IMG/VR virus record: IMGVR_UViG_3300023184_000026
Span: 233,259 to 297,258 of that record
DNA length: 64,000 bases
Direction: 5' to 3' (one strand)
The notes under the pieces were generated by a model. That model did not search any database. It was not told where the DNA came from and worked only from the letters and a program-made list of their open reading frames with translations. This document shows, piece by piece, positions 224 to 64,000 of this stretch; the first letter of the stretch is position 1, and each line of letters opens with the position of its first letter. The position numbers and the translations under genes were made by a program.

Positions 224-225
224 AA

Positions 226-28862: not shown

Positions 28863-28868
28863 AATATT

Positions 28869-29498: not shown

Positions 29499-30052
29499 TT
29501 AGAAAATTCCAAAACTATACAGAGGATGAAATGAATGAGTCTGGTATGACTTTTGGTAAAAATGTATATATTGCCAATGATGTTATCATTCATAATGCCC
29601 AGAATATAATCATAGGAGACAATGTTCGCATAGATACTCAATGTGTATTGATTGCTGGAAAAAATCACAAAATAAAAATTGGAAATAGCGTACATATTTC
29701 GGCAGGATGCTATTTTTATGGCAATTCCGGAAATATAACTCTGGGAGATTGTTGTTGCACTTCCGGTCGCTGCATTCTTTATACCGCAAATGATGATTAT
29801 ACAGACGGCTATATGGCCAATTCTGTGATAGATGATAAGTACAAAAAGGTGGTTGCTGGAAACATAGAGTTAAAAAAACATGCGTTGGTTGGATGTTATA
29901 CAGTAATACTTCCAAATGTTGTTTTGGAGCATGCCACGTCTGTAGGCGCACACTCGCTGATTACAAAATCTACTTCTCATTTTGATGTTGTGGCGGGTTG
30001 CCCAGCTAAATTTATAAAGAAAAGAAAAAATGTTTATTTGACAGATGTATAA
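29495..30052 (+). CDS. Hexapeptide-repeat (left-handed beta-helix) acetyltransferase
   Basis: FGKNVYI, IGDNVRI, IGNSVHI, LGDCCC repeats; VGAHSLI..DVVAGCPAKFIKKR C-terminus. Confidence 0.85.
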   Translation: MIRKFQNYTEDEMNESGMTFGKNVYIANDVIIHNAQNIIIGDNVRIDTQCVLIAGKNHKIKIGNSVHISAGCYFYGNSGNITLGDCCCTSGRCILYTANDDYTDGYMANSVIDDKYKKVVAGNIELKKHALVGCYTVILPNVVLEHATSVGAHSLITKSTSHFDVVAGCPAKFIKKRKNVYLTDV

Positions 30053-32149: not shown

Positions 32150-33909
32150 AACTATCCGTCATAATCACATCATATAAGTTTAAAGATTTCATTTCACAAT
32201 GTATTGATAGTATATTGTCACAAAAAACCGACTTTGGATTTGAAGTGTTGATCAGAGATGACGGCACAAATGATGGTACATTTGAATTGTTAAATGAGAA
32301 ATACAAAGCAAATACCAATATCAGAATATTGGACTCTTCCACGAATGTGGGTGCAGTCGAAAATCTTCTTATATTGGTCAATGAAGCCAAGGGTAAATAT
32401 ATCGCACATATAGATGGCGACGATTATCTCACAGACGATGGATATTATCAGCGTTCTATTAATTATTTGGATGAAAATCCATCATATGCCTTATACTGCT
32501 CCGGTTGTAGATATCTTGAAAATGGAGTTGTGTCGCCCGAAAACCATTGGATAGTGAGTGCCAAACCAGATATTGAGTTAAAAGATTTACTTGTTGAAAA
32601 CTATGTGTCATTTGCGCGAGTATTTAAAAAAACAGAATTTAGAAGAGAGATATTCAAAGACATTATATATCCCGACTGGGTTTTTAACTTTGAAATATTA
32701 AAATACGGTAAAGGTTATTGTGATACCAATCATTGTGCAGGAATGTATAGAATACATAAAAATGGAATGTTTTCTATGACGCCAGCCGAAGAAAAGTTGG
32801 AAAATAAAAATATTATTAAATCGGAGTTGAAAAAAAGATATGCAAGATTTCAACACAAGGTTATTACCATAGTTGATAGTTTTGTATACAACGACTCAAT
32901 TCGGTCCAAATTATTGAATACAATAAATTGGATGAAAGAAGATGGTCACGAAGTATTGCTTGTATCCAATACCATGGTAGACAAGGAGATTTTAAAATAT
33001 GTAAAGTTTTATTTGTATGATAGTCGCAATCAACTATTTCAAGAAAAGTATGACGATGTTGGTCTTGTAGATTTTTGGAAATCTCTCGCTGATGGATTTT
33101 ATATACACGACGTTGTTCCAGTATTACAAAAGCACGGACTGTCTGTGATGATAAATCTTTTTAATGCATTATTATACGCAAAGTCGCAAGGATATACACA
33201 TTTTCAAAGATTTGAAGTTGATGATCTATTTGGAGAAAAATCGAGAGAATATATAAAGCAGGTTCCATATGTGTGCGCAAATGAAAATAAACACGGGTTG
33301 TTCTATTACAACGAAGGTAATAATCCACCGGATATGTCGTTTCATTATTTTTATTGCAACATAGATGAATTTTTATCCAAAGTTCCGAGATTATCCAACG
33401 AGCAAGATTATGTGAATTATCTAAGACAATATCACGATGACAATAAGTTCCGTATAGTTGAGGTTTATGTATATGAAAGTTTAAAAAGAAATAATGACTC
33501 AAAGTTTTTAATAAAGTTTGATGAAAATGCCATGACATTGGACTTTCCAGACACACGTTGGAATACAGAAACATCTATCAGCAGTTTTGATCCCAAATAC
33601 GGAAAGTGTACTACTCGACTTTATTATATCAACGAACACAATAAAGAAACTAATACATTCAATCGCGGATCATCGTATGCCGTTTACACGCACTCATATC
33701 ACTCCGGATCTACGTTTAGAAAAATAGTTGTAGAAAAGATTGATGGTGGAAAATACGAATTTATTCACAATACAGAAGTAGCGAATGGCTGGGCGTGGAA
33801 TGAAGTTTTTTCGGATGTTAAATCCATTTCTGTATATGAAGATGATAAGTTTTTATATAGAGAGCATGTTGCGGATTGTATATCATATATCAATCTAATA
33901 AGAAAATGA
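32146..33909 (+). CDS. GT2-family glycosyltransferase with unknown C-terminal domain
   Basis: LSVIITSY..FISQCIDSILSQ..EVLIRDDGTND..YIAHIDGDD. Confidence 0.85.
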   Translation: MKLSVIITSYKFKDFISQCIDSILSQKTDFGFEVLIRDDGTNDGTFELLNEKYKANTNIRILDSSTNVGAVENLLILVNEAKGKYIAHIDGDDYLTDDGYYQRSINYLDENPSYALYCSGCRYLENGVVSPENHWIVSAKPDIELKDLLVENYVSFARVFKKTEFRREIFKDIIYPDWVFNFEILKYGKGYCDTNHCAGMYRIHKNGMFSMTPAEEKLENKNIIKSELKKRYARFQHKVITIVDSFVYNDSIRSKLLNTINWMKEDGHEVLLVSNTMVDKEILKYVKFYLYDSRNQLFQEKYDDVGLVDFWKSLADGFYIHDVVPVLQKHGLSVMINLFNALLYAKSQGYTHFQRFEVDDLFGEKSREYIKQVPYVCANENKHGLFYYNEGNNPPDMSFHYFYCNIDEFLSKVPRLSNEQDYVNYLRQYHDDNKFRIVEVYVYESLKRNNDSKFLIKFDENAMTLDFPDTRWNTETSISSFDPKYGKCTTRLYYINEHNKETNTFNRGSSYAVYTHSYHSGSTFRKIVVEKIDGGKYEFIHNTEVANGWAWNEVFSDVKSISVYEDDKFLYREHVADCISYINLIRK

Positions 33910-34004: not shown

Positions 34005-36125
34005 ATGAAAGTAATTAATGTAAATCCTGGCATACTTCCTATTCCACCAAATGGTTGGGGCGCTGTTGAAAAGATAATTTGGGACTATCACCAAGAAATT
34101 TTAAAAGTTGGCATTCGCAGCGAAATCAAATATCTCGATGATATAAAATATGACGAAAGTATGGTTGTTCATGTGCACGTCGCCAATTTGGCAATTATAT
34201 GCCATGAGCGCGGCATTCCTTATATTTTTAGTATTCATGATCATCATGCATATTTGTATGGTAAAGATTCCGATGTATTTAGAAAAAATTTACAAGCAAT
34301 TGAAAACAGCGTATTTTCATTGTCGCCTTGCAAATATCTTATTCCATATTTTGGAAGCAAGAAGCTTCGTTACTTCAGTCACGCTGTTAACACGGATATA
34401 TTTAAGTTCAATGGTCATCAGAGACGACATGTGCCAAGACTGTTGTGTGTTGCAAATAACGGATATGCATATGATCAAAGCATAGACCGAAAAGGTTTCA
34501 AAATAGCTATTGAGTCGGCAATGAAACTAGCGTTGCCTATTACTATAGCCGGACCCAGCAACAACAAGAATTTTTTTAAAACAATGTCTCCGGAAATTAA
34601 CGGATATACAGGTCTCACAAAGTTATTCGACCTTGATGAAAAATGGCTTGTTGATCTTTATAACGAAAATGATATATTCCTCCATTTTTCGGAATTAGAA
34701 GCCGGACATCCAAACCTAACACTGCTTGAGGCAATGTCATGCGGTTTGCCGGTTGTTGGTACGTTCGAAGAGGTATTGTATAAAGGAATGTATGTGACTG
34801 ATAGAAATCTTGATAATGCAGTCGCCGGAATAAAAACTGTCGTGGGTAGTTTTGACCAATATCGACAGGATGCTTTAAATACTGCAAATTCCAATTCATA
34901 TGGAATCAGAGTAAATGAACTTGCAAAATTGTATAGTGAATATCGCGAACAGATATTTGCCAATGGAATAATAAATCATTATCAAACTTCTCAACAAACA
35001 CTAAAAGAACCAAAAAATAAAATAAATATATCGTTTTTGCGTGGACCAAAAGTAGAAATACTTGGACCAGTCAATAAAAAATATAAAGTCAAGTTTTATG
35101 ATATGGATACAAATAGTGTCATATACGAAACGACACTCAGAAATAATATGTGGTCCGTTTCAAATAAAAGATATTTTGTAAAATGGAAAATTGAAGTTTA
35201 TGAAGTTGTGAATGAAAATTGGGAAATGCTTATTGAAACCCGCGTTTTGGATTTAGCTAAAAAGTCGATAAAAGTGGTATTTGATACCAATAGCTTGGGA
35301 GATATTATTTCATATATTGGCACAACCGATGCCTTCCAGAAAAAACACAATTGCGAACTTACGTGTGTTGTTTTTAATACGGAACTAGTTGAATTATTCA
35401 GCAAAAATTACAAAAATATAAAGTTCTCAAGAACAAACGACGGCGATGACAATTATTACTCCACGTATTATATTGGTTATTATGATCAAGAAAATTGGGA
35501 CGGTAATATGAAAAAAAATCCAAAGCATTTATCACTTGCGTTGGTGGCGGCAAATATACTGGGATTGCCAGAGGTGGAAATTCCACCATCTTTGAATATA
35601 ACCCCTTTGAAGCATAATAAAAAATATGTATGTATTGCAACACAAAGCACTACACAGGCAAAATATTGGAACAATCCAAATGGCTGGAACCTTGTTGTGG
35701 ATTATATCAAATCCAAAGGATATGAAGTGTGGTGCATAGATTTACACAACAGTTTTGGGTCTGGTGGTAAAATGAATTATATGCCAGCGGGTGCCATCGA
35801 TAAGACTGGAAAATTCCCGTTGGAAGAAAGAATGTCTCAGGTTGCAGGTGCGGAGTTTTTTATTGGACTTGGATCTGGATTATCTTGGCTGGCATGGGGA
35901 GTTCATCAAAAAGTTATACTTATCAGTGGATTTAGCGAGGAGTTTGCCGAATTCAAAAATCCTTATAGAGTTATCAATAAAAACGTGTGTCATGGATGTT
36001 GGAATGATGCAAGTTGTATATTTGACAAATCCGATTGGAACTGGTGCCCCAGAAATAAAGATTTTGAATGTACTAAAGAGATATATCCAGAGGATGTTAT
36101 AAAAATGATAGACAAAATAATTTGA
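34005..36125 (+). CDS. GT4 glycosyltransferase fused to a TibC/Aah-like (BAHT) protein O-heptosyltransferase
   Basis: N-terminal IPPNGWGAVE..EAGHPNLTLLEAMSCGLPVV (GT4); from ~35020 GPKVEI..YFVKWKI, SLGDI..FQKKHNC, YVCIATQST..KYWNNPNGW, FIGLGSGLSWLAW, ISGFS, CHGCWND..WCP..ECTK. Confidence 0.82.
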   Translation: MKVINVNPGILPIPPNGWGAVEKIIWDYHQEILKVGIRSEIKYLDDIKYDESMVVHVHVANLAIICHERGIPYIFSIHDHHAYLYGKDSDVFRKNLQAIENSVFSLSPCKYLIPYFGSKKLRYFSHAVNTDIFKFNGHQRRHVPRLLCVANNGYAYDQSIDRKGFKIAIESAMKLALPITIAGPSNNKNFFKTMSPEINGYTGLTKLFDLDEKWLVDLYNENDIFLHFSELEAGHPNLTLLEAMSCGLPVVGTFEEVLYKGMYVTDRNLDNAVAGIKTVVGSFDQYRQDALNTANSNSYGIRVNELAKLYSEYREQIFANGIINHYQTSQQTLKEPKNKINISFLRGPKVEILGPVNKKYKVKFYDMDTNSVIYETTLRNNMWSVSNKRYFVKWKIEVYEVVNENWEMLIETRVLDLAKKSIKVVFDTNSLGDIISYIGTTDAFQKKHNCELTCVVFNTELVELFSKNYKNIKFSRTNDGDDNYYSTYYIGYYDQENWDGNMKKNPKHLSLALVAANILGLPEVEIPPSLNITPLKHNKKYVCIATQSTTQAKYWNNPNGWNLVVDYIKSKGYEVWCIDLHNSFGSGGKMNYMPAGAIDKTGKFPLEERMSQVAGAEFFIGLGSGLSWLAWGVHQKVILISGFSEEFAEFKNPYRVINKNVCHGCWNDASCIFDKSDWNWCPRNKDFECTKEIYPEDVIKMIDKII

Positions 36126-53324: not shown

Positions 53325-54641
53325 ATGGCATGGCGTGGACCAACAGTTAAACCGATACTAAATAGACCACCGAACAAAGTAAGTTCTGGTCCAGAAATGT
53401 CGGACAAGAAACAGGAAGTTTCATCAATTTCCGGACCACCTATATTTGGTCCAGAAGCAAATCGTGGCAGAGAACATAATATTCGAAGAGACACTGATGA
53501 TAGAAAAGATTTTGCCATCAAACTCATAGATATTGATGCGGCCATACTTGGTCATATGGACAATGTTATAAGTCCAACGATAGTAGATTCTGGCAGACAG
53601 ATAAAAGTTCCTATAAATTATGCTTCTCCGGAACGCTGGAAAGCTATTCGCAAAGATGGCTCACTTCGCGACAAAAATGGAAAAGTACAAACTCCTGCTA
53701 TTGCATTTCGTCGCAGCACTGTGCAAAGAAACGACAATTTGATAACATTAAATCGCTATCTTCAATATCCAGTGATGAGAAAGTTCAGCGAAAAAAATAA
53801 ATATGACAAATTTTCAGTAATGAACGGATTTGCGCCACGAAAAGAAATTTATAGTGTGGCAATGCCAGATCATGTGATAATAAATTACGAATTTATCATC
53901 TGGACAGAATTGGTTGAACAATGCAACTCAGTCATAGAAGCAATAAATTTTGCTACTGAAGATTACTGGGGAGATAAAAATAGATTTAAATTCAGAACAA
54001 GCATCAGCGATTATAATTTTGAAACAACAAATGATGCTGGTCAAGACAGAATTGTCAAAGCTACTTTTGGTTTAATATGCAATGCATATCTACTTCCGGA
54101 AAAATTTGAGAATTATAAATCTACTACACAAAAAGCATTTACACCAAGAAAAGTTGTATTTGATGTTCATGAAAAGATTATGAATGGAACAGCCGAAAGA
54201 GCCGTCGGTGCAGCTGTTTCTATTAATGATGGTAATACAATTCCGGCTGTGATATCACCAACCATAACTTATAATATTATAAATCAAAACAGTACATTGG
54301 AAGTATTGAATATTGTTGGTGGAGGAGATGGTGGAGCTACTGGATCATTCACCGCAAACTCTGTAACAATTTCTGGTTCTGCTGATATAGATTCTCAATT
54401 GATTGGTGATGGAAATGCAGCAAGATGGTTGGTTTCTATTTCTAATGGATCTGACATCAAAGTTAATGAAGTTATGTCAAGTTGGAACAATGTGTCTTCC
54501 AGTTTTTATGTAACAGAAGTAAGTCAAATTGGATATGTGCCAGTATCATTATCTGTAAATAATGTGGGTGGTAGCATACACTTGTTGGCCACTCCTTTAT
54601 CTGGAACATGGACACTTAAATATATAAAGATGGTTGTATGA
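53325..54641 (+). CDS. gp15: Tail completion/sheath stabiliser (gp15-like) with C-terminal beta-rich extension
   Basis: IKVPINYASPERW..TPAIAFRR..INYEFIIWT..QCNSVIEAI; extension from ~54230. Confidence 0.6.
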   Translation: MAWRGPTVKPILNRPPNKVSSGPEMSDKKQEVSSISGPPIFGPEANRGREHNIRRDTDDRKDFAIKLIDIDAAILGHMDNVISPTIVDSGRQIKVPINYASPERWKAIRKDGSLRDKNGKVQTPAIAFRRSTVQRNDNLITLNRYLQYPVMRKFSEKNKYDKFSVMNGFAPRKEIYSVAMPDHVIINYEFIIWTELVEQCNSVIEAINFATEDYWGDKNRFKFRTSISDYNFETTNDAGQDRIVKATFGLICNAYLLPEKFENYKSTTQKAFTPRKVVFDVHEKIMNGTAERAVGAAVSINDGNTIPAVISPTITYNIINQNSTLEVLNIVGGGDGGATGSFTANSVTISGSADIDSQLIGDGNAARWLVSISNGSDIKVNEVMSSWNNVSSSFYVTEVSQIGYVPVSLSVNNVGGSIHLLATPLSGTWTLKYIKMVV

Positions 54642-57600
54642 TTCAAAACGCATTTATAGCTTCAAATGGCTTGATTGTAAATGGAAATGCCGAAATTAAC
54701 GGAGATTTGACCGTGAGCGGCTTTGCATATGCTTCATCAAGTTATGCTATCACAGCATCATATGCACTAAATTTTTCAGGAACTAGCGGCATAAATGGTA
54801 CTGATGGAACTTCCGGAACGAGCGGTCAAAATGGTACAAGTGGTACAGGTGGAAATTCTGGCACAGATGGCACGTCCGGATCAAGTGGAGAATCTGGCAC
54901 CAGTGGAACAAACGGCTTGTCGGGAACAAGTGGTACGAGTGGAGAAAGTGGTACCAGTGGAACAACTGGCACAAGCGGAACGAGTGGAGCGACTGGCTCA
55001 TCTGGTCAATCTGGTAGCGATGGTACCAGTGGTACAAGTGGTACGAGTGGGGTAAGCGGGGCGACTGGTTCTTCTGGCACGAGTGGTACTGATGGCACGA
55101 GCGGCTCTTCTGGTTCTACAGGAATAAGTGGCACAAGCGGAACGAGCGGAGCGACTGGCTCATCTGGTCAATCTGGTAGCGATGGTACCAGTGGTACGAG
55201 TGGTACAAACGGTGCCAGTGGCACGAGCGGAATAAATGGTACATCCGGTTCTTCCGGAACAAGCGGAACGAGTGGAGAAACAGGTACAAGTGGTACAAGT
55301 GGCGCTACTGGTTCTTCTGGCACGAGTGGCACGGATGGCATTAGCGGTACAACGGGTGCAAGTGGCACATCAGGTTCAAGTGGCACCAGCGGTGCAACAG
55401 GCTCAAGTGGCACAAGCGGTGCAACTGGCGCATCAGGTTCAAGTGGCACAAGCGGTGCAACTGGCGCATCAGGTTCAAGTGGCACAAGCGGTGCAACTGG
55501 CGCATCAGGTTCAAGTGGCACCAGCGGTGTAACGGGTGCAAGTGGCACATCGGGTTCAAGTGGCACCAGCGGTGCAACTGGCGCATCAGGTTCAAGTGGC
55601 ACCAGCGGCACATCAGGTTCAAGTGGCACCAGCGGCACATCAGGCTCAAGTGGCACCAGCGGTGCAACTGGCGCATCAGGTTCAAGTGGCACCAGCGGTG
55701 TAACGGGTGCAAGTGGCACATCAGGTTCAAGTGGCACCAGCGGCACATCAGGTTCAAGTGGCACCAGCGGTGCATCGGGTTCAAGTGGCACCAGCGGCAC
55801 ATCAGGTTCAAGTGGCACCAGCGGTGCGGGAACCATTTCTGGCGGCACAGCAAATTATGTTGCAAGATTTACTGGCGCAACAACACTAACTACTGGTTCA
55901 ATATTTGACAATGCAACAAATGTGGGAATTGGAAAAGCAACGCCAAACGCAAATCTTGATGTATATGGTGATACAATAATTACAGGTAGTTTATCAGTGA
56001 CTGGTAACATTACTAATATAGGTAATGTCAGTGCAAACAGCATAACGGTTGCTGGGCAACCAACAACTTATGGTACAGTAAATCCTGATTATATTAACGC
56101 AGGTAGAATAACTTCCGACCAAACCGGTGCAGGTTCAGGTAGTGATATTATATTTAATTATGCACCTGTAAGTAGTGGTATATCTCTTAACACATCAACG
56201 GGTGTATTCACATTAACCGCAGGTAAAACATACAGTTTATTTGCAGAATTAAGTTTCAGCAATTTTAGTGATACAGCAAATGGTTATGAAATATACGATT
56301 GGGTAGATGCAACAACAAATACTAGATTAGTCACAACTGGTATAGGTGCTGGTATAGGTGAGAATATCAATAGAAATACAAATGAATTTAATGCAACATC
56401 TACTACTTTAATTTATACCCCAACTACAAACCAAACTGTAAAAGTTCGTATTGTAGAGGCGGCGGGAACAGTAACTGTCAGAGCAGGTATTGGAACAAAA
56501 GCAATTATTCAACAAATAAATCCCGTCATAGCGGTTCAAGCAACTGCTACTGGTACGGTTAGCACGAACTATGCAAAATACACAAGGTCTGCACAACAAA
56601 CTGGGTTATCAAATGGATCGGTTGTTGTTTGCAATGTAATAGAAAATACAGGTGGATCAGCAATATCAGTCAATACAGGAAGTGGTCAAGTTACATTGGC
56701 CGCTGGTAAAACTTATAGATTAAAAGGAATGATTCCCGGTTTCACTACTAGCGGTGCGAACGTAAGACCACAGTTCTGTTGGTATAATGAAACTACATTA
56801 ACATATATAGGTTCGTCTGCCGAATCGTACAGTCCGAGCGATGCTGTTGGATACGGAGCATTTGGCGGCGCAGCTGAAGCAATTATTACCACAGCTGCAA
56901 CAACCGTGACATCGTTTAGATTATTAGCAGGTGCGACCAATTTAGCAGGTATAGGCGGTAATACCGATTTTTCTACTACAGGAAGTTATCCGTGGATTGA
57001 CATACAAGAAATAGGAGCAACCTTCGCACTCAACGCACTTGACACAATGACTCTAACCGGCGCTGTTTCAGCCAGCGGTAATGTAACCGGACAAAACTTA
57101 ATATCATCAAACGCAAGTGGTAATGAAGGTGGAGAAATACAACTTGCTAAATCTCCAAATAGTACCTTATCTGGAAGTAATGTTGTCATTGATCAATACA
57201 TTGATAGAATTAGATTTTTTGAAAGCGGCGGTAGCTCAAGAGGTGCATATATTGATCTATCAACAGCACCGGCGGGGGTAGGTTTTTTAATTAATAATAG
57301 AGCAAGTGGCATTGTTGATGCCGGTACAGACGTTACATTAGGAAATTTGAAAGTAAGATTATCAACATCGGGAAATAGAAGTTTGCAAGTATCAACTGTT
57401 TCAGGAACATATTCAGTTTATGGCAGTAGTGTATATAGTACGGGAGGTCCAGGCGGTACATCAATAACAGACAATGCGCCATTAACAATTACAACCACGC
57501 CCACATATATTAATGCGGCATATAGTTTTGGTCTGGGAGGATATACTGATACTTGGTTGCTTATGTCCACGGCCAGTAACATTGCTTGGAGAATAACATT

Positions 57601-57655
57601 GATAGTTGGTAGTAGTTACAACAACAATATGATATGTATTGAAAGATTGGTATAA
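54638..57655 (+). CDS. Fibre protein with a proline-free Gly-X-Y collagen-like stalk and Thr/Gly-rich head domains
   Basis: SASYA-type leader, ~116 G-X-Y triplets, then two related beta domains (VFTLTAGKTYSL / QVTLAAGKTYRL). Confidence 0.8.
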   Translation: MIQNAFIASNGLIVNGNAEINGDLTVSGFAYASSSYAITASYALNFSGTSGINGTDGTSGTSGQNGTSGTGGNSGTDGTSGSSGESGTSGTNGLSGTSGTSGESGTSGTTGTSGTSGATGSSGQSGSDGTSGTSGTSGVSGATGSSGTSGTDGTSGSSGSTGISGTSGTSGATGSSGQSGSDGTSGTSGTNGASGTSGINGTSGSSGTSGTSGETGTSGTSGATGSSGTSGTDGISGTTGASGTSGSSGTSGATGSSGTSGATGASGSSGTSGATGASGSSGTSGATGASGSSGTSGVTGASGTSGSSGTSGATGASGSSGTSGTSGSSGTSGTSGSSGTSGATGASGSSGTSGVTGASGTSGSSGTSGTSGSSGTSGASGSSGTSGTSGSSGTSGAGTISGGTANYVARFTGATTLTTGSIFDNATNVGIGKATPNANLDVYGDTIITGSLSVTGNITNIGNVSANSITVAGQPTTYGTVNPDYINAGRITSDQTGAGSGSDIIFNYAPVSSGISLNTSTGVFTLTAGKTYSLFAELSFSNFSDTANGYEIYDWVDATTNTRLVTTGIGAGIGENINRNTNEFNATSTTLIYTPTTNQTVKVRIVEAAGTVTVRAGIGTKAIIQQINPVIAVQATATGTVSTNYAKYTRSAQQTGLSNGSVVVCNVIENTGGSAISVNTGSGQVTLAAGKTYRLKGMIPGFTTSGANVRPQFCWYNETTLTYIGSSAESYSPSDAVGYGAFGGAAEAIITTAATTVTSFRLLAGATNLAGIGGNTDFSTTGSYPWIDIQEIGATFALNALDTMTLTGAVSASGNVTGQNLISSNASGNEGGEIQLAKSPNSTLSGSNVVIDQYIDRIRFFESGGSSRGAYIDLSTAPAGVGFLINNRASGIVDAGTDVTLGNLKVRLSTSGNRSLQVSTVSGTYSVYGSSVYSTGGPGGTSITDNAPLTITTTPTYINAAYSFGLGGYTDTWLLMSTASNIAWRITLIVGSSYNNNMICIERLV
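54779..55825 (+). repeat. Coding 9-nt-period repeat (GTS/GSS/GAT/GAS) with 27- and 36-bp higher-order units
   Basis: 1044 nt between the first Gly (54779) and Gly 55823; near-identical TCAGGTTCAAGTGGCAC(C/A)AGCGG units from ~55370 to 55825. Confidence 0.95.
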
Positions 57656-57778: not shown

Positions 57779-57791
57779 TAATATAAAACTT

Positions 57792-60155
57792 ATGCCTACT
57801 TCACTTCCAACAAAAATGTCCATGTTTGAGAATGCAGTTTCACTCTCAACTTCGAGTTATATAATAGGATTGGATATGTATGGTGGGCAACTATCCAACG
57901 TAAAAGTTTCTGCATCAATTGCTGGATATGAACTTTCAAGAAAAAGATGGATACTTAATCCACCGGTAACATCATCAAACGATGTTCGCGGAGATGATGG
58001 TGCGGAATCGTATAATAGTGGTCAATATTGGATAAAATCTGGCAGTGTTTGGTTGGAGCTTGTTGTGACTGGTTCGAACAGTAGCGGCACAATTTCAAGC
58101 AGTTATCAGCTGTCAGATGGTGGTGGAGAAGAATTTGGAGCGGGAAATAATGTAACTTTTGGTAGAGCAAATATTGGTGCCATAACTGGCTCAAAAATCA
58201 ACATTGTAGCACAGGCAAATATCGGCACTAGTATATTAGATGAACATTTTGTTACTGGCAGCTTGAACGTTTCTGGTTCGTTGAGAACCACTGGAACAGC
58301 AACCATACGAGCAAAAACATATATAAAATTTGACGCTGCTGCCGACGGAATATATTTCATAAGTGGCAGCGGTTTTACTCAGGCTGCGTCCATAATCTTG
58401 GCAAATTCAAGAGTAAACTTCAGTTCCACTGCGGGTACTACGCCAAATGGTTTCACGTTCAATACAGGTACTGTTAGCAATGCAGTTTTGGTACGAGACA
58501 ACGGTTCGTTGAATGTTTTTGGTAGCGGAAGTTTTGGTAAAACTACATCAAATGCGGTATTGGATGTTAATGGAAATACAATAGTAACAGGGTCATTGAC
58601 TGTGACTACCGGAAGTATTGTAATAACCGGTTCTTCTGTATATCCTTTGGATATAACATCTACAACCGGTAACGCTAATTTTAGAGTCATAGACACCAAT
58701 AACTCAACTGCGTTTGGATATTTTACAAATGGATTTGGTACTGGAAGAGTTGGCGTGGGTAATCTGAGTATGTTTGTCGGTGGGCAAGCTGGTATGTCAA
58801 CGATAATACAAGCTGGCAACATCATTTCCATGATAATCAATACATCTGGCAGCGTTGTCATTGGAAACGCGGCATCAAGTGCAAGATTGAACATAAGCGG
58901 AAGTGCTGTTGTTACGGGTTCAATATACATAAATAACGGAACATTAATTGGAACTGCGTCATATGCATTAAATGCAAAATCAAATAATGTATATAATGTT
59001 AAAGATTATGGAGCCGTTGGAGATGGAACAACTAATGACACGACCGCAATACAAACTGCAATTAACGCAGTCAAAGTTGCTGGCTTTGGAACAGTATATT
59101 TTCCGGATGGTACATTTGTAATAACCGGTTCATTGACCATTCCATCAAATCCACAATGTGATATTTCTTTGGAAGGTGAAGGTTCAAACATATCTATTAT
59201 CAAACAAACATCAAATGCAAATGCAATTTACTTTGATATGAATGATGGTAGTGGTTGGGCGAATGATTATCAAGTAGCAATAAAGAGTCTTGCATTCAAA
59301 ACTTCTGGACAAGCCAGCACAGCAATACATGTTACATATGGCACTTTACAGTACTCACAGCACTCAAATATATCAGTTGATATAAATGATGTTCATATCT
59401 ATTCCGATGGTTCAAATTATTGGAACAATGGAATTGTTCTTGAGTCGGCATGGAATTTTAGAATTTCAAACACGATGGTGATTGGAAAAACGGGATCGTC
59501 TCCATATAATGGCACAGGGTTGGAAATACGCAGAATGTGCGTAAATGGATCAATTAATCAATCGCAGTTCAATTTTTGGAAAACTGGAATATTTGTAAAT
59601 ACTGTAGATTATACATCAGCTGGAATGAACACAGAAGGATTGTTCCTTGATCAAATATATATGGTGCCTGTTAATTATGGGGTGTATGTAAAAGGCAATA
59701 AAACATTCTACAATGCTCCATTTAATTCAAATGATTGGGCGGGCAGACCAATTGCTGGAAGAATGGTGTTGTTTTCGTTCAATGACAGTCACATCGATTC
59801 GCGAGATTCTGGTAATGCACTGTTGCTTGAAAACGTACAAAGCCATTATATATCAAATAATCTTATGATATCAGATGGTACTGGTTCCGTGGTTTATGGT
59901 TCAAATGCATATGAAGGAACATTTACCGGAAATACATTATTTAATGCAGGCAGTGCGCCGTCAATTTATATTGGTGGATACAGCGGATCTGCTAATATAG
60001 TAACAGGAAATGTATTTCGCGGAGGATCTACACATGTATTACTTGAATCAAGTTCAATATACAATAAAGTGTATGGAAATATTGCATATGATGCTCTTAA
60101 TATTTCCGTGACCAATGCTGGTTCAAATAATTTGGTTGGAAGTGTAGGCAACTAA
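57792..60155 (+). CDS. Tail fibre/tailspike with pectate-lyase-like beta-helix (putative depolymerase)
   Basis: VYNVKDYGAVGDGTTNDTTAIQTAI..TVYFPDGTF (~58990) followed by right-handed beta-helix-like repeats. Confidence 0.8.
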   Translation: MPTSLPTKMSMFENAVSLSTSSYIIGLDMYGGQLSNVKVSASIAGYELSRKRWILNPPVTSSNDVRGDDGAESYNSGQYWIKSGSVWLELVVTGSNSSGTISSSYQLSDGGGEEFGAGNNVTFGRANIGAITGSKINIVAQANIGTSILDEHFVTGSLNVSGSLRTTGTATIRAKTYIKFDAAADGIYFISGSGFTQAASIILANSRVNFSSTAGTTPNGFTFNTGTVSNAVLVRDNGSLNVFGSGSFGKTTSNAVLDVNGNTIVTGSLTVTTGSIVITGSSVYPLDITSTTGNANFRVIDTNNSTAFGYFTNGFGTGRVGVGNLSMFVGGQAGMSTIIQAGNIISMIINTSGSVVIGNAASSARLNISGSAVVTGSIYINNGTLIGTASYALNAKSNNVYNVKDYGAVGDGTTNDTTAIQTAINAVKVAGFGTVYFPDGTFVITGSLTIPSNPQCDISLEGEGSNISIIKQTSNANAIYFDMNDGSGWANDYQVAIKSLAFKTSGQASTAIHVTYGTLQYSQHSNISVDINDVHIYSDGSNYWNNGIVLESAWNFRISNTMVIGKTGSSPYNGTGLEIRRMCVNGSINQSQFNFWKTGIFVNTVDYTSAGMNTEGLFLDQIYMVPVNYGVYVKGNKTFYNAPFNSNDWAGRPIAGRMVLFSFNDSHIDSRDSGNALLLENVQSHYISNNLMISDGTGSVVYGSNAYEGTFTGNTLFNAGSAPSIYIGGYSGSANIVTGNVFRGGSTHVLLESSSIYNKVYGNIAYDALNISVTNAGSNNLVGSVGN

Positions 60156-60162
60156 TATTATT

Positions 60163-60873
60163 ATGGGTGCAAGAACAGACGAATTCAATAAAAAATTTTT
60201 ATACACGGAAACTAATCCGGAAGGAATAATTGCGGGCAAAAAAGGAATATTCTTTTTTAGAAAAGGTAACGAATTTTTTGTAAATTATAGTGGAAATCTT
60301 GAATCCGGTGCTTGGGAAAAATTATCATATCGAACAGTCATTATACCCGTTCCACCAGCTTCTAAAGTCATACAATATAAGAAACCGCATGAAATATGGT
60401 TAAAAACCACTGATGGATTTTATAGTAATGAAACTAATAAAATCATGCCAAAAACTGGCTGGAAGTTTTTTTCGTACGATGATGCATTTGCAATGTTGGT
60501 GTTCAGAAAAATTACTTGGCACTTTCCAGTACCAACATCTTCATATTATTTGGGTGGAGTGGATGGAAACAGAAGCTACGATGATGACTTCTTTTATGCT
60601 AAAATAGGCGGAATATGGTATAGAACTCCAGTTACACTATGGAATTTTTTAGACACTCCTGCTCCTGTCGAAGATCCAAGTATATCAACAAGTCTTCCTT
60701 TTGTTGATCTTCCCCTCGCTGGTATTGGTTTGAATTCATATGACACGGGGTGTTCTCAAGTGGGCGACCAAACATACGACGTTGGATTTTTCTACATAAA
60801 AGTAAATAAAACAAACTGGAAAAGATCTAGACTAAGTTTATACAAAATATTACCGAAAATGGCTTTATTCTAA
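60163..60873 (+). CDS. Tail-fibre-associated protein
   Basis: NPEGIIAGKKG..FFRK..TGW motif and two YD..FFY.K....W.R repeats of the type common in phage tail proteins. Confidence 0.5.
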   Translation: MGARTDEFNKKFLYTETNPEGIIAGKKGIFFFRKGNEFFVNYSGNLESGAWEKLSYRTVIIPVPPASKVIQYKKPHEIWLKTTDGFYSNETNKIMPKTGWKFFSYDDAFAMLVFRKITWHFPVPTSSYYLGGVDGNRSYDDDFFYAKIGGIWYRTPVTLWNFLDTPAPVEDPSISTSLPFVDLPLAGIGLNSYDTGCSQVGDQTYDVGFFYIKVNKTNWKRSRLSLYKILPKMALF

Positions 60874-60890
60874 TAATTATATAAAACTAA

Positions 60891-63104
60891 ATGAGCATTA
60901 ATCCAAAAGATATTTATTTTACACAGAGAAATGCAGCAAATACTGCATTTACCGAAGTGTATGTCAGTGGAAGTAATTTATTAATACAGACCAATGCTGA
61001 TGGTATAATAACCGGTTCTAACGTATTACCGGCCAACATAAGCGCAGTCAGTGCTTCATATGCTCTCACGGCATCGTATGTTTTGGGTGGATCAATTTCT
61101 GGATCTATTGATTCGGCATCATATGCAGTAAGTGCGTCGTATTCTGCGTATGCACTAACTGCGTCGTATGTTTTGGGTGGATCAATTTCCGGTTCTGTTG
61201 ATTCGGCTTCATATGCGTTAAGTGCATCGTATGCATCAACTGCATCAAAAGCCGAGTCGTTGATTGCTGGAATAAATATAAATGTTGGCCAAATAACTGC
61301 GTCTTCAATATTGGTTGATAAATTGACCGTAAATATTGTCACCAGCAGCATTGCATATATAACTGGCAGTACAATTTTTGGAAGTAGTCTTTCTGATACT
61401 CATCGATTCACAGGCAGTGTGTCAATCACTGGATCAATTTCATTTGCGGGTTTGCTTGAGGGAGATGGTAGTAAATTGCGCAATGTTGGTGAAATTGATA
61501 AAATATTTTATGTGGCAGAAGATGGCAGCGATTCCAACGATGGAAAAACATTAAATACTCCATTCAGAACAATCAAACACGCATCTATTGTAGTGTCTTC
61601 GTCAATTGTGCTATATGGAACTGGGTCGGCTCCTTGGAGAAGCACAATCAGAATACAAAGCGGATATTATATTGAAGAGGCTCCGGTAATTATTCCACAA
61701 TGGACTTCTATTGTTGGAAATGATCTTAGAACAACAGTTATTCGCCCAACCGCCGGTACAAAAACTGAAAATATGTTTTTGATGAATAACGGAACATACG
61801 CATATAATCTGCGCTTTGAAGGTTCAACAATTGACAATCTTGAAGATCCGCGCAAAGGATTTTTCTTTGCATTTCAACCCGGAGCATTCATAACAACATC
61901 CCCGTATATTCAAAACTGCTCTTGTATCAACACTCCGTTTGATAAGTTTTATGTACCATTAAGTCCAAATTCAAGTCCTCCAAATTATCTAGTTGGAAAT
62001 GGTCCAGGTGGCATGATCGTGGATGACAGCGTACTAGATCCATATAGTCCATTGAAATCAATGATTGTTGACGCATACACACAAGTTGCGTTCAATGGTA
62101 TTGGATTGTGTGTTCGCGGCAGAGGTTATGCACAACAAGTTTCGTTCTTCACAAATTTTAGCAGAGTAGGTATATTTGCCATGGATGGCGGTCATGCTTC
62201 TTTGCTGAACTCCAATACAACATTTGGTGATTATGGATTAAGAGCATCTGGTTCTCGTATAATAATTGTACCTAATATAAATCCTATAAGCTCTTCTGTG
62301 GACGCTTCTGCATCTGTTCTTCTTTTGTCAAATGCGTCGGCCATTCAAGATTATATGATGGACCAGCTTAAAATTCATGGCTGGTATAGTTCATCATATC
62401 TTATACCAACATCATCGGCATATCTTTCTACAATTAAAGACAGCAGTATTCTTATATCATCTCTTGCATCAGACTTGCTTGTTGAAAAAGCTGCTTTAAC
62501 ATCTACATTCCTTCAAGGACAATTTAAAGGACAAGATATATCGGGCGACAAAAGATATACGCTTCCCACGGCATCTGCTGACTTTAGAAAAGGTGCTATA
62601 GCTGCCTTTAGAGTCAACGATGGCAAAAAGATGGCAATGGACTATACATCATCATATCTGTATATAAAGGAATATATCAACAGTGATCCAGATATACTTT
62701 TTGCAACCATGACTTCTCAAGCCAAGGATAAAGTAAATCAAATGCTTGATCTTGCCATTGATGTTATAAGAAGCGTTGCTATTGATGTTGAGCCTACATA
62801 TCTACAAGAATTTGGTTCACTTATTACAGCAACTTCTCAAGATCTTTCATACGCAGGATCTGGAGTCAATTTTCTTGGATTGCCTGTGAATCAGGGCGGC
62901 ATAGGTCAAACAAACTATGATATTCGCATATATGAAGAAGCAGGTGGAAGAGTATATCATACAGCAGGAGATGAAACAGGAGACTTTTTTGCTGGTACGG
63001 ATTTTGTAATAAGACAAGCAACTGGTACAATAGAAGGCAGAACATTTGATAAAGCGATGGCCGCGAGAATTGTTCCATTAAATTTAGCGTTGGAGAGCGT
63101 TTAA
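60891..63104 (+). CDS. Fibre/spike protein with SASYA repeats and beta-helix domain
   Basis: Repeated [ST]ASY[AV]; IFYVAEDGSDSNDGKTLNTPFRTIKHA (DUF1565-like start of a beta-helix). Confidence 0.7.
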   Translation: MSINPKDIYFTQRNAANTAFTEVYVSGSNLLIQTNADGIITGSNVLPANISAVSASYALTASYVLGGSISGSIDSASYAVSASYSAYALTASYVLGGSISGSVDSASYALSASYASTASKAESLIAGININVGQITASSILVDKLTVNIVTSSIAYITGSTIFGSSLSDTHRFTGSVSITGSISFAGLLEGDGSKLRNVGEIDKIFYVAEDGSDSNDGKTLNTPFRTIKHASIVVSSSIVLYGTGSAPWRSTIRIQSGYYIEEAPVIIPQWTSIVGNDLRTTVIRPTAGTKTENMFLMNNGTYAYNLRFEGSTIDNLEDPRKGFFFAFQPGAFITTSPYIQNCSCINTPFDKFYVPLSPNSSPPNYLVGNGPGGMIVDDSVLDPYSPLKSMIVDAYTQVAFNGIGLCVRGRGYAQQVSFFTNFSRVGIFAMDGGHASLLNSNTTFGDYGLRASGSRIIIVPNINPISSSVDASASVLLLSNASAIQDYMMDQLKIHGWYSSSYLIPTSSAYLSTIKDSSILISSLASDLLVEKAALTSTFLQGQFKGQDISGDKRYTLPTASADFRKGAIAAFRVNDGKKMAMDYTSSYLYIKEYINSDPDILFATMTSQAKDKVNQMLDLAIDVIRSVAIDVEPTYLQEFGSLITATSQDLSYAGSGVNFLGLPVNQGGIGQTNYDIRIYEEAGGRVYHTAGDETGDFFAGTDFVIRQATGTIEGRTFDKAMAARIVPLNLALESV
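61059..61238 (+). repeat. Imperfect 90-bp tandem duplication (YALTASYVLGGSISGS[IV]DSASYA[VL]SASY)
   Basis: Units start at 61059 and 61149; mostly synonymous differences. Confidence 0.85.
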
Positions 63105-63499: not shown

Positions 63500-64000
63500 A
63501 TGTCCAAACTAGTAGGCAGACAACCAATAGAAGTAAAGTTAATTGACAAGGTACATGGATATGTACCAATATATGACAGCGCGTCTGGATATTGGACAAC
63601 AACCGACCTTTATGCTGCTATAACAAGCAGTGTGTCTTCCACCGCAAGTTTTGCAATCAGTGCTTCATATGCACTTACAGCAAGTTATGCATTGAGTTTT
63701 AGCGGAACAAGTGGAACATCTGGTACAAGTGGAACATCCGGTGCCAATGGATCGTCTGGCACAAGTGGAACCAGTGGCACAAGTGGTTCAAGCGGCACAG
63801 CGGGAACAAGTGGCTCTTCTGGTACATCAGGCACGTCTGGTATAGACGGCACAAGCGGTTCAAGTGGAACCAGTGGCACAAGTGGTTCAAGCGGCACAGC
63901 GGGAACAAGTGGCTCTTCTGGTACATCAGGCACGTCTGGTATAGACGGCACAAGCGGTTCAAGTGGAACCAGTGGCACAAGTGGTTCAAGCGGCACAGCG
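63500..64000 (+). CDS. Second Gly-Thr-Ser collagen-like fibre protein (5' part; runs off the window; absent from the ORF track)
   Basis: ATG 63500 MSKLVGRQ..ISASYALTASYALSFSGTSGTSG..; frame stays open to the window end; G-X-Y starts at 63704. Confidence 0.85.
   Translation, partial: MSKLVGRQPIEVKLIDKVHGYVPIYDSASGYWTTTDLYAAITSSVSSTASFAISASYALTASYALSFSGTSGTSGTSGTSGANGSSGTSGTSGTSGSSGTAGTSGSSGTSGTSGIDGTSGSSGTSGTSGSSGTAGTSGSSGTSGTSGIDGTSGSSGTSGTSGSSGTA
63764..64000 (+). repeat. Perfect 99-bp tandem repeat (33 codons)
   Basis: Identical units start at 63764, 63863 and 63962. Confidence 0.92.

What the first reader, a model, noticed from the sequence alone, without database searches (positions are those of the whole stretch)
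54779..55825. About 116 uninterrupted Gly-X-Y triplets with no proline, nearly all Ser/Thr
Seen: GTS, GSS, GAT, GAS, GES triplets and zero Pro; a second such gene begins at 63500. Established: triple helices normally rely on Pro/Hyp or charge pairs, but glycosylated Thr stabilises vent-worm cuticle collagen, and Bacillus BclA collagen repeats are O-glycosylated. At about 0.29 nm per residue this stalk would be about 100 nm. Inference: a glycan-stabilised collagen fibre dependent on the island, offering roughly 200 potential acceptor residues per chain. Alternatives are a polyproline-II bundle (snow-flea antifreeze-like Gly-X-X) or a disordered glyco-brush.
Basis: partly seen in the sequence, partly recalled or inferred. 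Interest (0 to 1): 0.72.

Follow-up and report, generated by a model that had tools for sequence, protein, structure and literature searches.

The report
Sugar-linked proline-free collagen phage fibre
A giant bacterial virus encodes a roughly 100 nm fibre built from 117 proline-free, serine/threonine-rich collagen triplets, and across many phages such fibres are inherited together with a phage-specific relative of the protein-sugar transferase TibC, which suggests an undescribed kind of sugar-coated collagen.

Summary
ORF 54638-57655 (+, 1005 aa) carries 117 uninterrupted Gly-X-Y triplets (54779-55831). They contain no Pro, Lys or Arg, and 185 of 351 residues are Ser or Thr. A second such gene starts at 63500.

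The protein is a virion fibre of a 297-kb T4-like phage. Its parts are a short N-terminal anchor, the collagen stalk, two tandem C1q/BclA-like heads (Z 15-18) and a distal beta-sandwich.

The window also encodes a 706-aa GT1 fusion to a true TibC homologue (34005-36125, E 1e-74 to PDB 4RB4). The catalytic Asp, the sugar-binding residues and the four iron-finger Cys are all kept.

The new evidence is comparative:
- TibC-like genes occur in 4 of 50,697 reference phage records.
- They occur in 22 of 28 viral contigs chosen only for Ser/Thr-rich GXY DNA.
- They occur in 1 of 14 contigs chosen for Gly-Pro-X collagen, and that one also has a Ser/Thr run.
- In 10 of 17 lineages the transferase lies within 3 kb of such a gene (2.4 expected).
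- The phage enzymes form their own clade, apart from bacterial autotransporter heptosyltransferases.

Glycosylation of the stalk is therefore well supported genomically but not shown. Glycan-dependent helix stability is untested. The cultured Microcystis phage Mel-JY01 has the same pairing and is a test system.

The parts
54638..57655 (+). Fibre gene 1 (1005 aa). Its ATG overlaps the stop of the upstream gene (ATGA).
   Evidence: ORF list; Pfam Collagen 6.5e-48; PHROG tail-fibre families down to 6.7e-58; 183 metagenomic homologues of the C-terminal part.
54638..54778 (+). N-terminal 47 residues ending in the motif ASSSYAITASYAL. This is the presumed virion-attachment or registration segment.
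   Evidence: Sequence. Similar [ST]ASYA[IL]xAS[YF][AV]L motifs occur in the genes at 57792, 60891 and 63500 and just before the collagen run of L009. The function is inferred.
54779..55831 (+). Collagen-like stalk: 117 uninterrupted Gly-X-Y triplets, proline-free, 53% Ser+Thr.
   Evidence: A near-identical phage lacks exactly 4 triplets here.
55832..56077 (+). Neck after the stalk (residues 399-480). It begins with the junction GAGTISGGTANYVARFT, which is shared with the third collagen gene of the genome.
   Evidence: 49% identity to the equivalent part of the L009 fibre. The model confidence is low here.
56078..56527 (+). C1q/TNF-like jelly-roll head domain 1 (residues about 481-630).
   Evidence: AlphaFold model. 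VIA-align Z 15.6 to the BclA C-terminal domain 1wck, 16.6 to BxpB and 15.9 to the Caprin-2 C1q domain. Foldseek gave the same families.
56561..57022 (+). C1q/TNF-like jelly-roll head domain 2 (residues about 642-795).
   Evidence: VIA-align Z 16.8, rmsd 2.0, 21% identity to the F-BclA C-terminal domain 9h38. Domains 1 and 2 together give Z 18.6 to the single-chain C1q head 5hzf.
57176..57652 (+). Distal beta-sandwich domain (residues about 847-1005), the presumed receptor-binding tip.
   Evidence: Model secondary structure, pLDDT 50-77. No fold was assigned. The role is inferred from its position.
63500..64000 (+). Start of fibre gene 2: a 68-residue N-terminus with ASFAISASYALTASYAL, then at least 99 residues of Ser/Thr GXY. 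It is cut by the end of the contig.
   Evidence: a perfect 99-base tandem unit. The genome starts in frame inside a GXY run of 89 triplets.
34005..36125 (+). Bifunctional glycosyltransferase (706 aa): an N-terminal GT1/GT4 domain fused to a TibC-like (BAHT family) protein O-heptosyltransferase domain (residues about 341-706).
   Evidence: Pfam TibC_1st, Glyco_transf_9 and Glycos_transf_1. phmmer E 1.3e-74 to TibC 4RB4/4RAP over residues 33-385. Key residues are conserved.
26928..33909 (+). Rest of the glycosylation island: GT1+FkbM methyltransferase (26928-28862), short DegT-like ORF (28869-29498), hexapeptide acyltransferase (29495-30052), unknown ORF (30045-30845), CmcI-like methyltransferase (30842-32149) and GT2 (32146-33909).
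   Evidence: Pfam. The same GT1, FkbM and methyltransferase functions are fused to the TibC-like domain in other phages.
57792..63104 (+). Neighbouring fibre and spike genes: a pectate-lyase-fold tailspike-like protein (57792-60155), an unknown ORF (60163-60873) and a fibre with ASYA repeats (60891-63104).
   Evidence: Pfam Pect-lyase_RHGA_epim 2.2e-15; PHROG tail spike and tail fibre families.
55168..55865 (-). Antisense open frames (226 and 174 aa) across the repeat. They are by-products of the GXY codon periodicity, not genes.
   Evidence: The equivalent antisense frames are annotated as CDS in the GenBank record of Mel-JY01.

Best explanation
ORF 54638-57655 encodes a homotrimeric virion fibre of a T4-like jumbo phage.

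Proposed assembly and function: A short N-terminal segment anchors the fibre to the particle. The gene follows, and overlaps, weakly gp13-15-like neck genes, so it may be a neck or tail fibre. Two tandem C1q/BclA-like heads trimerise and nucleate a roughly 100 nm collagen triple helix of 117 proline-free Gly-Thr/Ser/Ala-Ser/Thr triplets. A distal beta-sandwich binds the host.

Proposed glycosylation: While still in the cytoplasm, the stalk is O-glycosylated on its many Ser (and possibly Thr) residues by the phage's own TibC-like transferase, which uses a host-made ADP-heptose-type donor. The glycan is then extended and methylated by the fused GT1 domain and the other island enzymes. It would hydrate, stiffen and/or protect a helix that lacks Pro/Hyp and charge pairs.

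Shown: the sequence, the domain folds, an intact transferase, and the genomic coupling of the two gene types.

Inferred: the triple helix, glycosylation of the stalk, the identity of the sugar, and the stabilising role.
For: Fibre and collagen nature:
- Collagen Pfam match and PHROG tail-fibre matches.
- Structural-module context: terminase, gp20 portal, prohead protease and gp23 upstream.
- C1q/BclA-like heads right after the stalk, Z 15-18.6. This is the architecture of C1q, collagens VIII/X and BclA.
- Gly codons are invariant at bases 1-2 while the third base is saturated.
- An indel of exactly 4 triplets separates this gene from that of a near-identical phage.

Transferase:
- E 1e-74 to TibC over its full length.
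- D110, T226, K230, R286, W305, F368 and all four iron-finger Cys are conserved here.
- D110, K230, W305 and the Cys are conserved in 32 of 32 phage-type homologues.

Coupling:
- 15 of 27 transferase lineages have a proline-free Ser/Thr GXY ORF within 10 kb, 12 within 3 kb and 7 within 650 bp.
- Placement test on 17 lineages with long records: 10 within 3 kb against 2.4 expected, P about 1e-5.
- The neighbouring proteins share only the repeat: 18 of 120 pairs have any other similarity.
- 29 of 33 long TibC+ records carry collagen.
- 22 of 28 records picked only by Ser/Thr GXY DNA carry TibC, against 1 of 14 picked by (GPX)5. That one also has a Ser/Thr run. Fisher p 1.2e-5.
- Background: 4 of 50,697 reference phage records.
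- Among capsid relatives, TibC-negative phages lack collagen, including two complete 354-369 kb genomes, Flavobacterium phage immuto and LR756508.
- Phage-type enzymes form a clade with 100% support, apart from 48 bacterial BAHTs. Two bacterial-MAG contigs inside that clade have the repeat 50 bp away.
- The nearest cultured relative, Mel-JY01, has the same pairing.

Plausibility: TibC-type enzymes act in the cytoplasm on serines. Phage particles assemble in the cytoplasm, and 75% of Y positions here are Ser.
Against: - There is no direct evidence of any glycan.
- In this genome the transferase is 18.5 kb from the nearest Ser/Thr collagen gene, with the head module in between.
- 6 of 28 Ser/Thr-collagen records lack TibC, one of them a complete genome.
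- 4 of 33 TibC+ records, and LR756504, lack collagen.
- The phage enzymes are a single clade. Much of the co-occurrence could therefore be co-inheritance within related phages, and some contigs are near-duplicates.
- Known BAHT substrates are beta-helices, not collagen.
- The thumb-tip residues needed for the TibC dodecamer are not conserved.
- Arg-286 is replaced in 25 of 32 phage-type enzymes. The stereoselectivity position is Gly, so the donor sugar may differ.
- The phage encodes no ADP-heptose pathway and the host is unknown. Its nearest cultured relative infects a cyanobacterium.
- The trimer could not be modelled.
Confidence: 0.55

Rival explanations
1. The fibre is an ordinary unglycosylated collagen-like phage fibre. 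Its helix is held by its length, by Ser/Thr hydration networks and by the C1q-like clamp. The TibC-like enzyme and the island act on something else: another virion protein, host surface proteins or polysaccharide, or superinfection exclusion. They travel with fibre genes only because both sit in the variable host-recognition part of related genomes.
For: - The transferase is not adjacent to a fibre gene here (18.5 kb).
- Exceptions exist in both directions.
- The phage enzymes are a single clade.
- Published readings of glycosyltransferases in phage fibre regions favour LPS or DNA modification.
- A recombinant E. coli prophage collagen is stable at 42 C without any glycan.
- Polar-residue hydration networks are described for bacterial collagens.
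Against: - The association is specific to Ser/Thr-type collagen: 22 of 28 against 1 of 14.
- Capsid relatives without TibC still have fibres, such as immuto, but no collagen.
- The only element shared by the adjacent genes is the repeat.
- The stable E. coli example relies on about 50% Pro in X and on charge pairs. Both are absent here.
Confidence: 0.27
2. The repeat is not a triple helix. It is a flexible, mucin-like Gly/Ser/Thr linker, with or without sugars, that simply spaces the heads from the particle.
For: There is no Pro, Hyp or charge pairs. No model or experiment shows a helix. The sequence is of low complexity and has tandem DNA repeats.
Against: - Gly at every third residue for 351 residues has invariant codon bases 1-2 despite saturated synonymous change.
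- Runs of up to 695 triplets in relatives are uninterrupted.
- Indels come in whole triplets.
- A C1q-like trimerisation domain follows directly, as in true collagens.
Confidence: 0.1
3. The repeat folds into a bundle of antiparallel polyproline-II or polyglycine-II helices, like snow-flea antifreeze or the phage S16 gp38 adhesin, rather than an extended trimer.
For: Gly-X-X periodicity with small residues is compatible with such bundles (general knowledge, not tested here).
Against: There are no turn-forming interruptions in 351 residues. Repeat number varies freely between relatives, from 4-triplet indels to runs of 20 to 695 triplets. The domain context is collagen plus C1q-like head.
Confidence: 0.03

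Closest known systems
BclA and F-BclA of the Bacillus cereus group (exosporium nap and ENA tip fibrils)
   Same: The architecture matches: a short N-terminal anchor, a Thr-rich collagen-like region of variable triplet number, and a C-terminal C1q/TNF-like trimerising domain. Fold match Z 15.6 to 1wck and 16.8 to 9h38. BclA's collagen region is O-glycosylated.
   Different: BclA triplets are mostly GPT, with Pro in X and Thr in Y. Here there is no Pro and Y is 75% Ser. BclA's glycan is rhamnose-based and is built by unrelated enzymes. This protein has two tandem heads plus a third domain and is a phage virion protein. Sequence identity is only 15-21%.
TibC/AAH bacterial autotransporter heptosyltransferases (BAHT) with TibA/AIDA-I
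   Same: The transferase domain is a full-length homologue, E 1e-74. It keeps the catalytic Asp, the sugar-binding residues and the 1Fe-0S iron finger. As with tibC-tibA, enzyme and presumed substrate genes are often adjacent. Both involve cytoplasmic hyperglycosylation of Ser in a repetitive fibre-like protein.
   Different: The phage enzymes are a separate clade. They are usually fused to GT1, FkbM or other methyltransferase domains and lack the hydrophobic thumb tip. The linked protein is a collagen-like repeat, not an autotransporter beta-helix. No autotransporter is involved.
Collagen-like tail fibre and decoration proteins of phages (E. coli prophage EPclA/B, SPP1 gp12, PRD1 P5)
   Same: These are trimeric GXY stalks in phage host-recognition or decoration proteins, flanked by trimerisation modules.
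   Different: Those repeats are short or rich in Pro and charged residues. EPclA has about half Pro in X and GPK/GER triplets, and is demonstrably unglycosylated with a Tm of 42 C. Here there are 117 triplets with no Pro and almost no charge.
Glycosylated-threonine cuticle collagen of the vent worm Riftia ('sweet is stable')
   Same: It is the precedent that O-glycosylated hydroxy-amino acids in Y can replace Hyp in stabilising a triple helix. Bann et al. 2000 is cited as ref. 40 in PMC3368898.
   Different: It is an animal extracellular collagen with Gal on Thr in Gly-Pro-Thr. There is no relation in enzymes or sequence, and the parallel is untested here.
C1q, collagens VIII/X, adiponectin (collagen stalk plus gC1q/NC1 head)
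   Same: The stalk-plus-head plan is the same, and the head fold matches with Z 14-18.6.
   Different: Those are eukaryotic, Pro/Hyp-rich, single-head proteins. The match is fold-level only, with 10-13% identity.

Membership tests
Collagen triple-helix repeat proteins (Pfam PF01391) | Uninterrupted Gly-X-Y periodicity that scores above the family threshold | tested here: met
   117 triplets; 160.8 bits against a cut-off of 27.2.
Collagen triple-helix repeat proteins (Pfam PF01391) | Stabilising residues: Pro/Hyp in X/Y, or charge pairs | tested here: not met
   0 Pro, 0 Lys/Arg and 9 acidic residues in 351.
Collagen triple-helix repeat proteins (Pfam PF01391) | Adjacent trimerisation or nucleation domain | tested here: met
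   Two C1q/TNF-like domains follow the stalk, Z 15-18.6. Trimer formation itself was not tested.
Collagen triple-helix repeat proteins (Pfam PF01391) | Actual formation of a right-handed triple helix | not testable with these tools
CD, EM or a solved structure is needed.
BAHT family (TibC/AAH protein O-heptosyltransferases) | Full-length sequence homology, including part of the N-terminal barrel and the GT-B core | tested here: met
   E 1.3e-74. Query residues 351-704 align to TibC 33-385 of 406. Pfam TibC_1st and GT9 are just above their cut-offs.
BAHT family (TibC/AAH protein O-heptosyltransferases) | Catalytic base Asp-110 and sugar-binding Thr-226, Lys-230, Arg-286, Trp-305 | tested here: met
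   All five are identical in the window's enzyme. Across 32 phage-type enzymes, D, K and W are 32/32 and T is 31/32, but R is only 7/32.
BAHT family (TibC/AAH protein O-heptosyltransferases) | Iron-finger Cys-339, 342, 358 and 370 | tested here: met
   All four are conserved here and in 32 of 32 phage-type enzymes.
BAHT family (TibC/AAH protein O-heptosyltransferases) | Hydrophobic thumb tip (Phe-265/Val-266) needed for the dodecameric ring | tested here: not met
   Gly and Lys at these positions here; mostly Tyr and Met in the phage clade. The oligomeric state is therefore open.
BAHT family (TibC/AAH protein O-heptosyltransferases) | Substrate is a self-associating autotransporter beta-helix encoded nearby | tested here: not met
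   The neighbours are Ser/Thr collagen-like genes. Of the 53 BAHT loci found in bacterial genome records, 51 have no such repeat. The other 2 are MAG contigs (L197, L199) whose enzymes fall in the phage-type clade.
BAHT family (TibC/AAH protein O-heptosyltransferases) | Transfer of heptose from ADP-heptose to Ser | not testable with these tools
   No ADP-heptose pathway genes are in the phage. The stereoselectivity position is Gly.
BclA-type glycosylated collagen-like surface fibres | Collagen-like region followed by a C1q-like C-terminal domain | tested here: met
BclA-type glycosylated collagen-like surface fibres | Sequence-level membership (recognisable homology to BclA or Pfam C1q PF00386) | tested here: not met
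   No Pfam C1q hit in this protein. No PDB sequence hit for residues 398-1005. Some homologues do carry PF00386.
BclA-type glycosylated collagen-like surface fibres | O-glycans on the collagen-like region | not testable with these tools
   Only genomic coupling to glycosyltransferases is available.
T4-like phages (context) | gp23-type capsid protein, gp20 portal, T4-type large terminase, prohead protease | tested here: met
   Pfam Gp23 1.8e-77, Portal_T4 1.9e-70, Terminase_6N and Peptidase_S77. The nearest cultured capsid is Microcystis phage Mel-JY01, 58.6% identity.

The most novel reading that the evidence does not exclude
These fibres are a new class of collagen. They would be proline-free, Ser-rich triple helices whose folding or stability depends on dense cytoplasmic O-glycosylation by a dedicated, phage-specific clade of TibC-like (BAHT) enzymes fused to glycan-extending and methylating domains. 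That would be the first viral BAHTs, the first BAHT substrate that is not an autotransporter, and a widespread 'glyco-collagen' on environmental phages, including a cultured Microcystis phage.
Probability: 0.3. Interest if true: 0.9.

Novelty: new variant of a known kind. Interest (0 to 1): 0.76.

Why it matters
- **Collagen chemistry.** If the coupling reflects enzyme and substrate, it gives a third solution to stabilising a collagen helix without hydroxyproline, alongside charge pairs and Pro-rich sequences.
- **Enzyme family.** It extends a virulence-associated glycosyltransferase family to viruses and to a completely different substrate fold.
- **Phage glycosyltransferases.** It explains why glycosyltransferase islands sit beside fibre genes in large aquatic phages. 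These are usually read as LPS or DNA modification genes.
- **Biomaterials.** Glycosylated, Pro-free recombinant collagens made in the E. coli cytoplasm would interest biomaterials work.
- **Annotation.** Antisense frames across these repeats are already deposited as genes in a reference phage. Assemblies also break inside the repeats.
- **Testability.** A cultured system, Mel-JY01 on Microcystis, makes the idea directly testable.

Tried and rejected
- **Reference phage searches.** Megablast of 50000-64000 and tblastn of the fibre's C-terminal 608 residues against the phage collection found nothing. A first tblastn failed on a frame error.
- **PDB sequence search.** Searching with residues 398-1005 gave only noise. 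The fold search was needed instead.
- **Capsid-anchored control.** Capsid-anchored loci were meant as a neutral neighbourhood control. They are not neutral, because the fibre module lies 6-9 kb downstream of the capsid gene. They showed instead that Ser/Thr collagen fibres are conserved in the closest relatives. I replaced this control with a random-placement test on whole records.
- **Over-strict threshold.** One collagen scan used too strict an E-value and had to be partly repeated. For G050 there are 16 unconfirmed candidates.
- **ADP-heptose pathway.** Searches of the genome with SIS_2, PfkB and CTP_transf_like found nothing above cut-off.
- **Cytidylyltransferase lead.** The 1314-aa protein upstream of the island is not similar to Mel-JY01's 'cytidylyltransferase-like' protein.
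- **Literature.** Searches found no paper linking heptosyltransferases with collagen-like proteins or phage virions, and nothing on Mel-JY01. The term 'TibC' alone matched unrelated words.
- **Chance or non-coding repeat.** I rejected this reading because of the codon evidence.
Full report
**1. The observation**

The window is the last 64 kb of a 297,258-bp IMG/VR virus record with 37% G+C, estimated complete. ORF 54638-57655 on the + strand encodes 1005 residues.

Residues 48-398 (54779-55831) are 117 uninterrupted Gly-X-Y triplets:
- There is no Pro, Lys or Arg. There are six Asp and three Glu.
- Ser is 112 and Thr 73 of 351 residues.
- X is mostly Thr, Ser or Ala (57/24/21). Y is mostly Ser (88) or Thr (16).
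- Pfam Collagen scores 160.8 bits against a cut-off of 27.2.

The periodicity is selected, not a fresh DNA repeat. Bases 1 and 2 of all 117 Gly codons are invariant, while the third base differs in 64% of unit pairs. Ser uses both codon families (63 AGY, 49 TCN). Tandem-repeat identity is only 63-82%.

A near-identical phage on a 289,958-bp contig differs by the loss of exactly four triplets.

The contig also begins inside a GXY run, so the assembly broke in this repeat. A third gene at genome 4712-9262 has 362 triplets.

**2. What the protein is**

The surroundings are the late module of a T4-like phage: large terminase, gp20 portal, prohead protease and gp23 capsid protein. After these come weakly neck-like genes, a tailspike-like protein and further fibres. 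PHROGs places the ORF in tail-fibre families.

An AlphaFold model of residues 398-1005 has a mean pLDDT of 63, with domains at 70-90. It shows three beta-sandwich domains. The first two (about 481-630 and 642-795) are C1q/TNF-like jelly rolls:
- Z 15.6 to the BclA C-terminal domain.
- Z 16.8 to F-BclA.
- Z 14-18.6 to C1q heads and the collagen VIII/X NC1 domains.

The protein therefore has the classic plan of a collagen stalk followed by a trimerising C1q-like head. The closest comparison is BclA of Bacillus spores. This supports a true triple helix of about 100 nm, although I could not model the trimer.

The C-terminal part has 183 metagenomic homologues in mosaic combinations and none in the reference phage set.

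**3. The island**

Positions 26928-36125 encode the following:
- a GT1+FkbM methyltransferase
- a short DegT-like ORF
- a hexapeptide acyltransferase
- a CmcI-like methyltransferase
- a GT2
- a 706-aa GT1 fusion whose C-terminal half is a genuine TibC homologue, E 1.3e-74 to PDB 4RB4/4RAP over TibC residues 33-385

I compared this homologue with the published structure-function map of TibC (PMC4358343). The catalytic Asp-110, the sugar-binding Thr-226, Lys-230, Arg-286 and Trp-305, Phe-368 and all four iron-finger cysteines are conserved. The hydrophobic thumb tip is not. The stereoselectivity position is Gly.

The phage has no recognisable ADP-heptose pathway, so it would depend on the host for the donor.

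**4. The link between transferase and repeat**

Seven lines of evidence bear on it.

*(a) Neighbourhood.* A viral-contig scan with the TibC-like half returned 80 loci. In 39 of them a GXY run of at least 10 triplets lies within 10 kb. All but one are proline-free and Ser/Thr-rich.

I collapsed the loci to 27 transferase lineages at 75% identity. Of these, 15 have such an ORF within 10 kb, 12 within 3 kb and 7 within 650 bp, on either strand.

*(b) Placement test.* I fetched whole records of at least 75 kb for 17 lineages, chosen regardless of adjacency. The transferase lies within 3 kb of a Ser/Thr GXY ORF in 10 of them. Random placement predicts 2.4 (P about 1e-5). In this genome the distance is 18.5 kb.

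*(c) What the neighbours share.* The neighbouring proteins have diverse N- and C-terminal domains. Only 18 of 120 pairs share anything besides the repeat.

*(d) Reverse direction.* I picked 28 records of at least 50 kb only by a Ser/Thr GXY DNA pattern. Of these, 22 encode a TibC-like protein (E 1e-47 to 1e-133), as do five of the six complete ones.

*(e) Specificity.* I picked 14 records by a (Gly-Pro-X)5 pattern. Only one has the transferase, and that record also carries a 79+12-triplet Ser/Thr run. Fisher p is 1.2e-5.

*(f) Background.* Only 4 of 50,697 reference phage records have a TibC-like gene.

*(g) Capsid relatives.*
- Four of the five TibC-positive records show collagen. It is confirmed in three and rests on unconfirmed candidates in G050. 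The fifth is a fragment.
- Fourteen of the 15 TibC-negative records have no collagen, including two complete 354-369 kb genomes.
- Flavobacterium phage immuto and LR756508 lack both genes.

There are exceptions in both directions. Among the 28 Ser/Thr-collagen records, six lack the transferase: G070, which is complete, and five fragments. LR756504, G004 and three other TibC-positive records lack collagen.

**5. Phylogeny and fusions**

On a tree of 81 TibC-like domains, all phage sequences but one form a clade with 100% support, separate from 48 bacterial homologues.

The single 'viral' sequence in the bacterial clade comes from a record with no collagen at all.

Two bacterial-MAG contigs, from Polaromonas and a betaproteobacterium, fall inside the phage clade. 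They carry a Ser/Thr GXY run 50 bp from the transferase. None of the other 51 bacterial loci has such a run.

Because the phage enzymes are one clade, the association may stem from one old acquisition that was then kept together. That still indicates selection, but the counts above are not independent events.

The phage enzymes are repeatedly fused to GT1, FkbM, other methyltransferase, DXD-glycosyltransferase or dehydrogenase domains. The same functions appear in the window's island as separate genes. This suggests a methylated oligosaccharide rather than a single sugar.

Arg-286 is replaced in 25 of 32 phage enzymes, though not in this one. The donor may therefore differ among them.

**6. 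A cultured example**

The nearest cultured capsid relative is Microcystis phage Mel-JY01, at 58.6% identity. Its record shows the same pairing:
- The TibC-like domain is the C-terminus of a 1226-aa protein annotated 'methyltransferase FkbM'. As here, the gene lies upstream of the terminase.
- A Ser/Thr collagen ORF of at least 202 triplets lies 1.7 kb upstream, at record positions 2-3049.
- A second, shorter Ser/Thr run lies 0.7 kb downstream.
- GenBank annotates antisense frames across the first repeat instead.

**7. Mechanism and rivals**

The best reading is a trimeric fibre whose C1q-like heads nucleate a proline-free triple helix. The helix is O-glycosylated in the cytoplasm on Ser/Thr by the TibC-like enzyme and then elaborated by the island.

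BAHT enzymes act in the cytoplasm on serines of repetitive fibre-like proteins. Phage particles assemble in the cytoplasm, and three quarters of the Y positions here are Ser.

Known bacterial and prophage collagens rely on Pro and charge pairs. This stalk has neither, which makes a compensating modification plausible but not proven.

The main rival is that the helix needs no sugar and the enzymes act elsewhere. The exceptions and the 18.5-kb distance keep this rival alive. A disordered brush or a polyproline-II bundle fits the codon and domain evidence poorly.

**8. Novelty**

Collagen-like phage fibres, glycosylated bacterial collagen-like fibres (BclA) and BAHT enzymes are each known. I found no paper connecting BAHT enzymes with phages or collagen.

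The fibre is therefore a new variant of a known kind. The enzyme-repeat coupling is the part worth following up.

Noticed in passing
window 63500-64000 and genome positions 1-1661 (outside the window): The contig ends and begins inside Ser/Thr GXY repeats. The two ends do not overlap and are out of frame by two bases if joined. The assembly therefore probably broke, and lost sequence, inside fibre gene 2. Its C-terminal 286 residues are full of TASYV/SASFA repeats.
   Followed up: partly
genome 4712-9262 (outside the window): There is a third collagen-like fibre gene of about 1515 aa with 362 triplets and 3 Pro. It shares the post-stalk junction GAGTISGGTANYVAKFT. Its C-terminus looks like an intramolecular-chaperone (Peptidase S74-type) domain; I judged this by eye and did not test it.
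   Followed up: partly
window 54638-54778, 57792-60155, 60891-63104, 63500-63703: A motif of the form [ST]ASYA[IL]xAS[YF][AV]L recurs in four fibre genes, twice directly before a collagen run. A 90-base tandem duplication of it lies at 61059-61232. It may be a shared attachment or registration module.
   Followed up: no
window 55168-55865 and 63685-63996, minus strand; Mel-JY01 PP395634 positions 1-2298: Long antisense open frames (PLVPLEPD... type) run across the repeats. In the GenBank record of Mel-JY01 such antisense frames are annotated as two hypothetical proteins, while the 1016-codon collagen frame on the other strand is not annotated.
   Followed up: yes
window 28869-29498: The DegT/DnrJ-type aminotransferase ORF is only 209 aa and matches profile positions 25-97 of 360. 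It may be truncated, split or a remnant.
   Followed up: no
window 22254-26198: A 1314-aa protein lies just upstream of the island. It has weak RNA-ligase and HIGH-type nucleotidyltransferase matches, all below the curated cut-offs. It is not similar to Mel-JY01's 'cytidylyltransferase-like' protein.
   Followed up: partly
window 49685-50479 and 52448-52855: A DNA/RNA non-specific endonuclease with a hydrophobic N-terminus (Pfam 1.4e-51) sits inside the structural module. A small ORF that looks like a Vsr/DUF559-type endonuclease also sits there, between neck genes. The second was judged by eye only.
   Followed up: no
G071 (IMG/VR record of 163,945 bp), 85362-86378: The TibC-like match in this record is read through 7 in-frame TGA codons. 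This suggests a phage with TGA recoded as a sense codon.
   Followed up: no
L197 and L199 (Polaromonas and betaproteobacterial MAG contigs), about 10001-11300: Phage-type TibC-like genes with a Ser/Thr GXY run 50 bp away sit on contigs binned into bacterial genomes. These may be prophages or mis-binned phage contigs, and may hint at the hosts of some of these phages.
   Followed up: partly
L477 (G083, 170 kb), 6351-13773: One phage carries a huge GPQ/GPI-type collagen gene. Directly beside it is a separate proline-free Ser/Thr run. The record also has a TibC-like gene. Both collagen chemistries therefore occur in one genome.
   Followed up: partly
window 10819-14181: A 1120-aa protein has FG-GAP repeats (6e-24) and a dockerin-like segment. 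This is unusual cargo for a phage and is unrelated to the finding.
   Followed up: no
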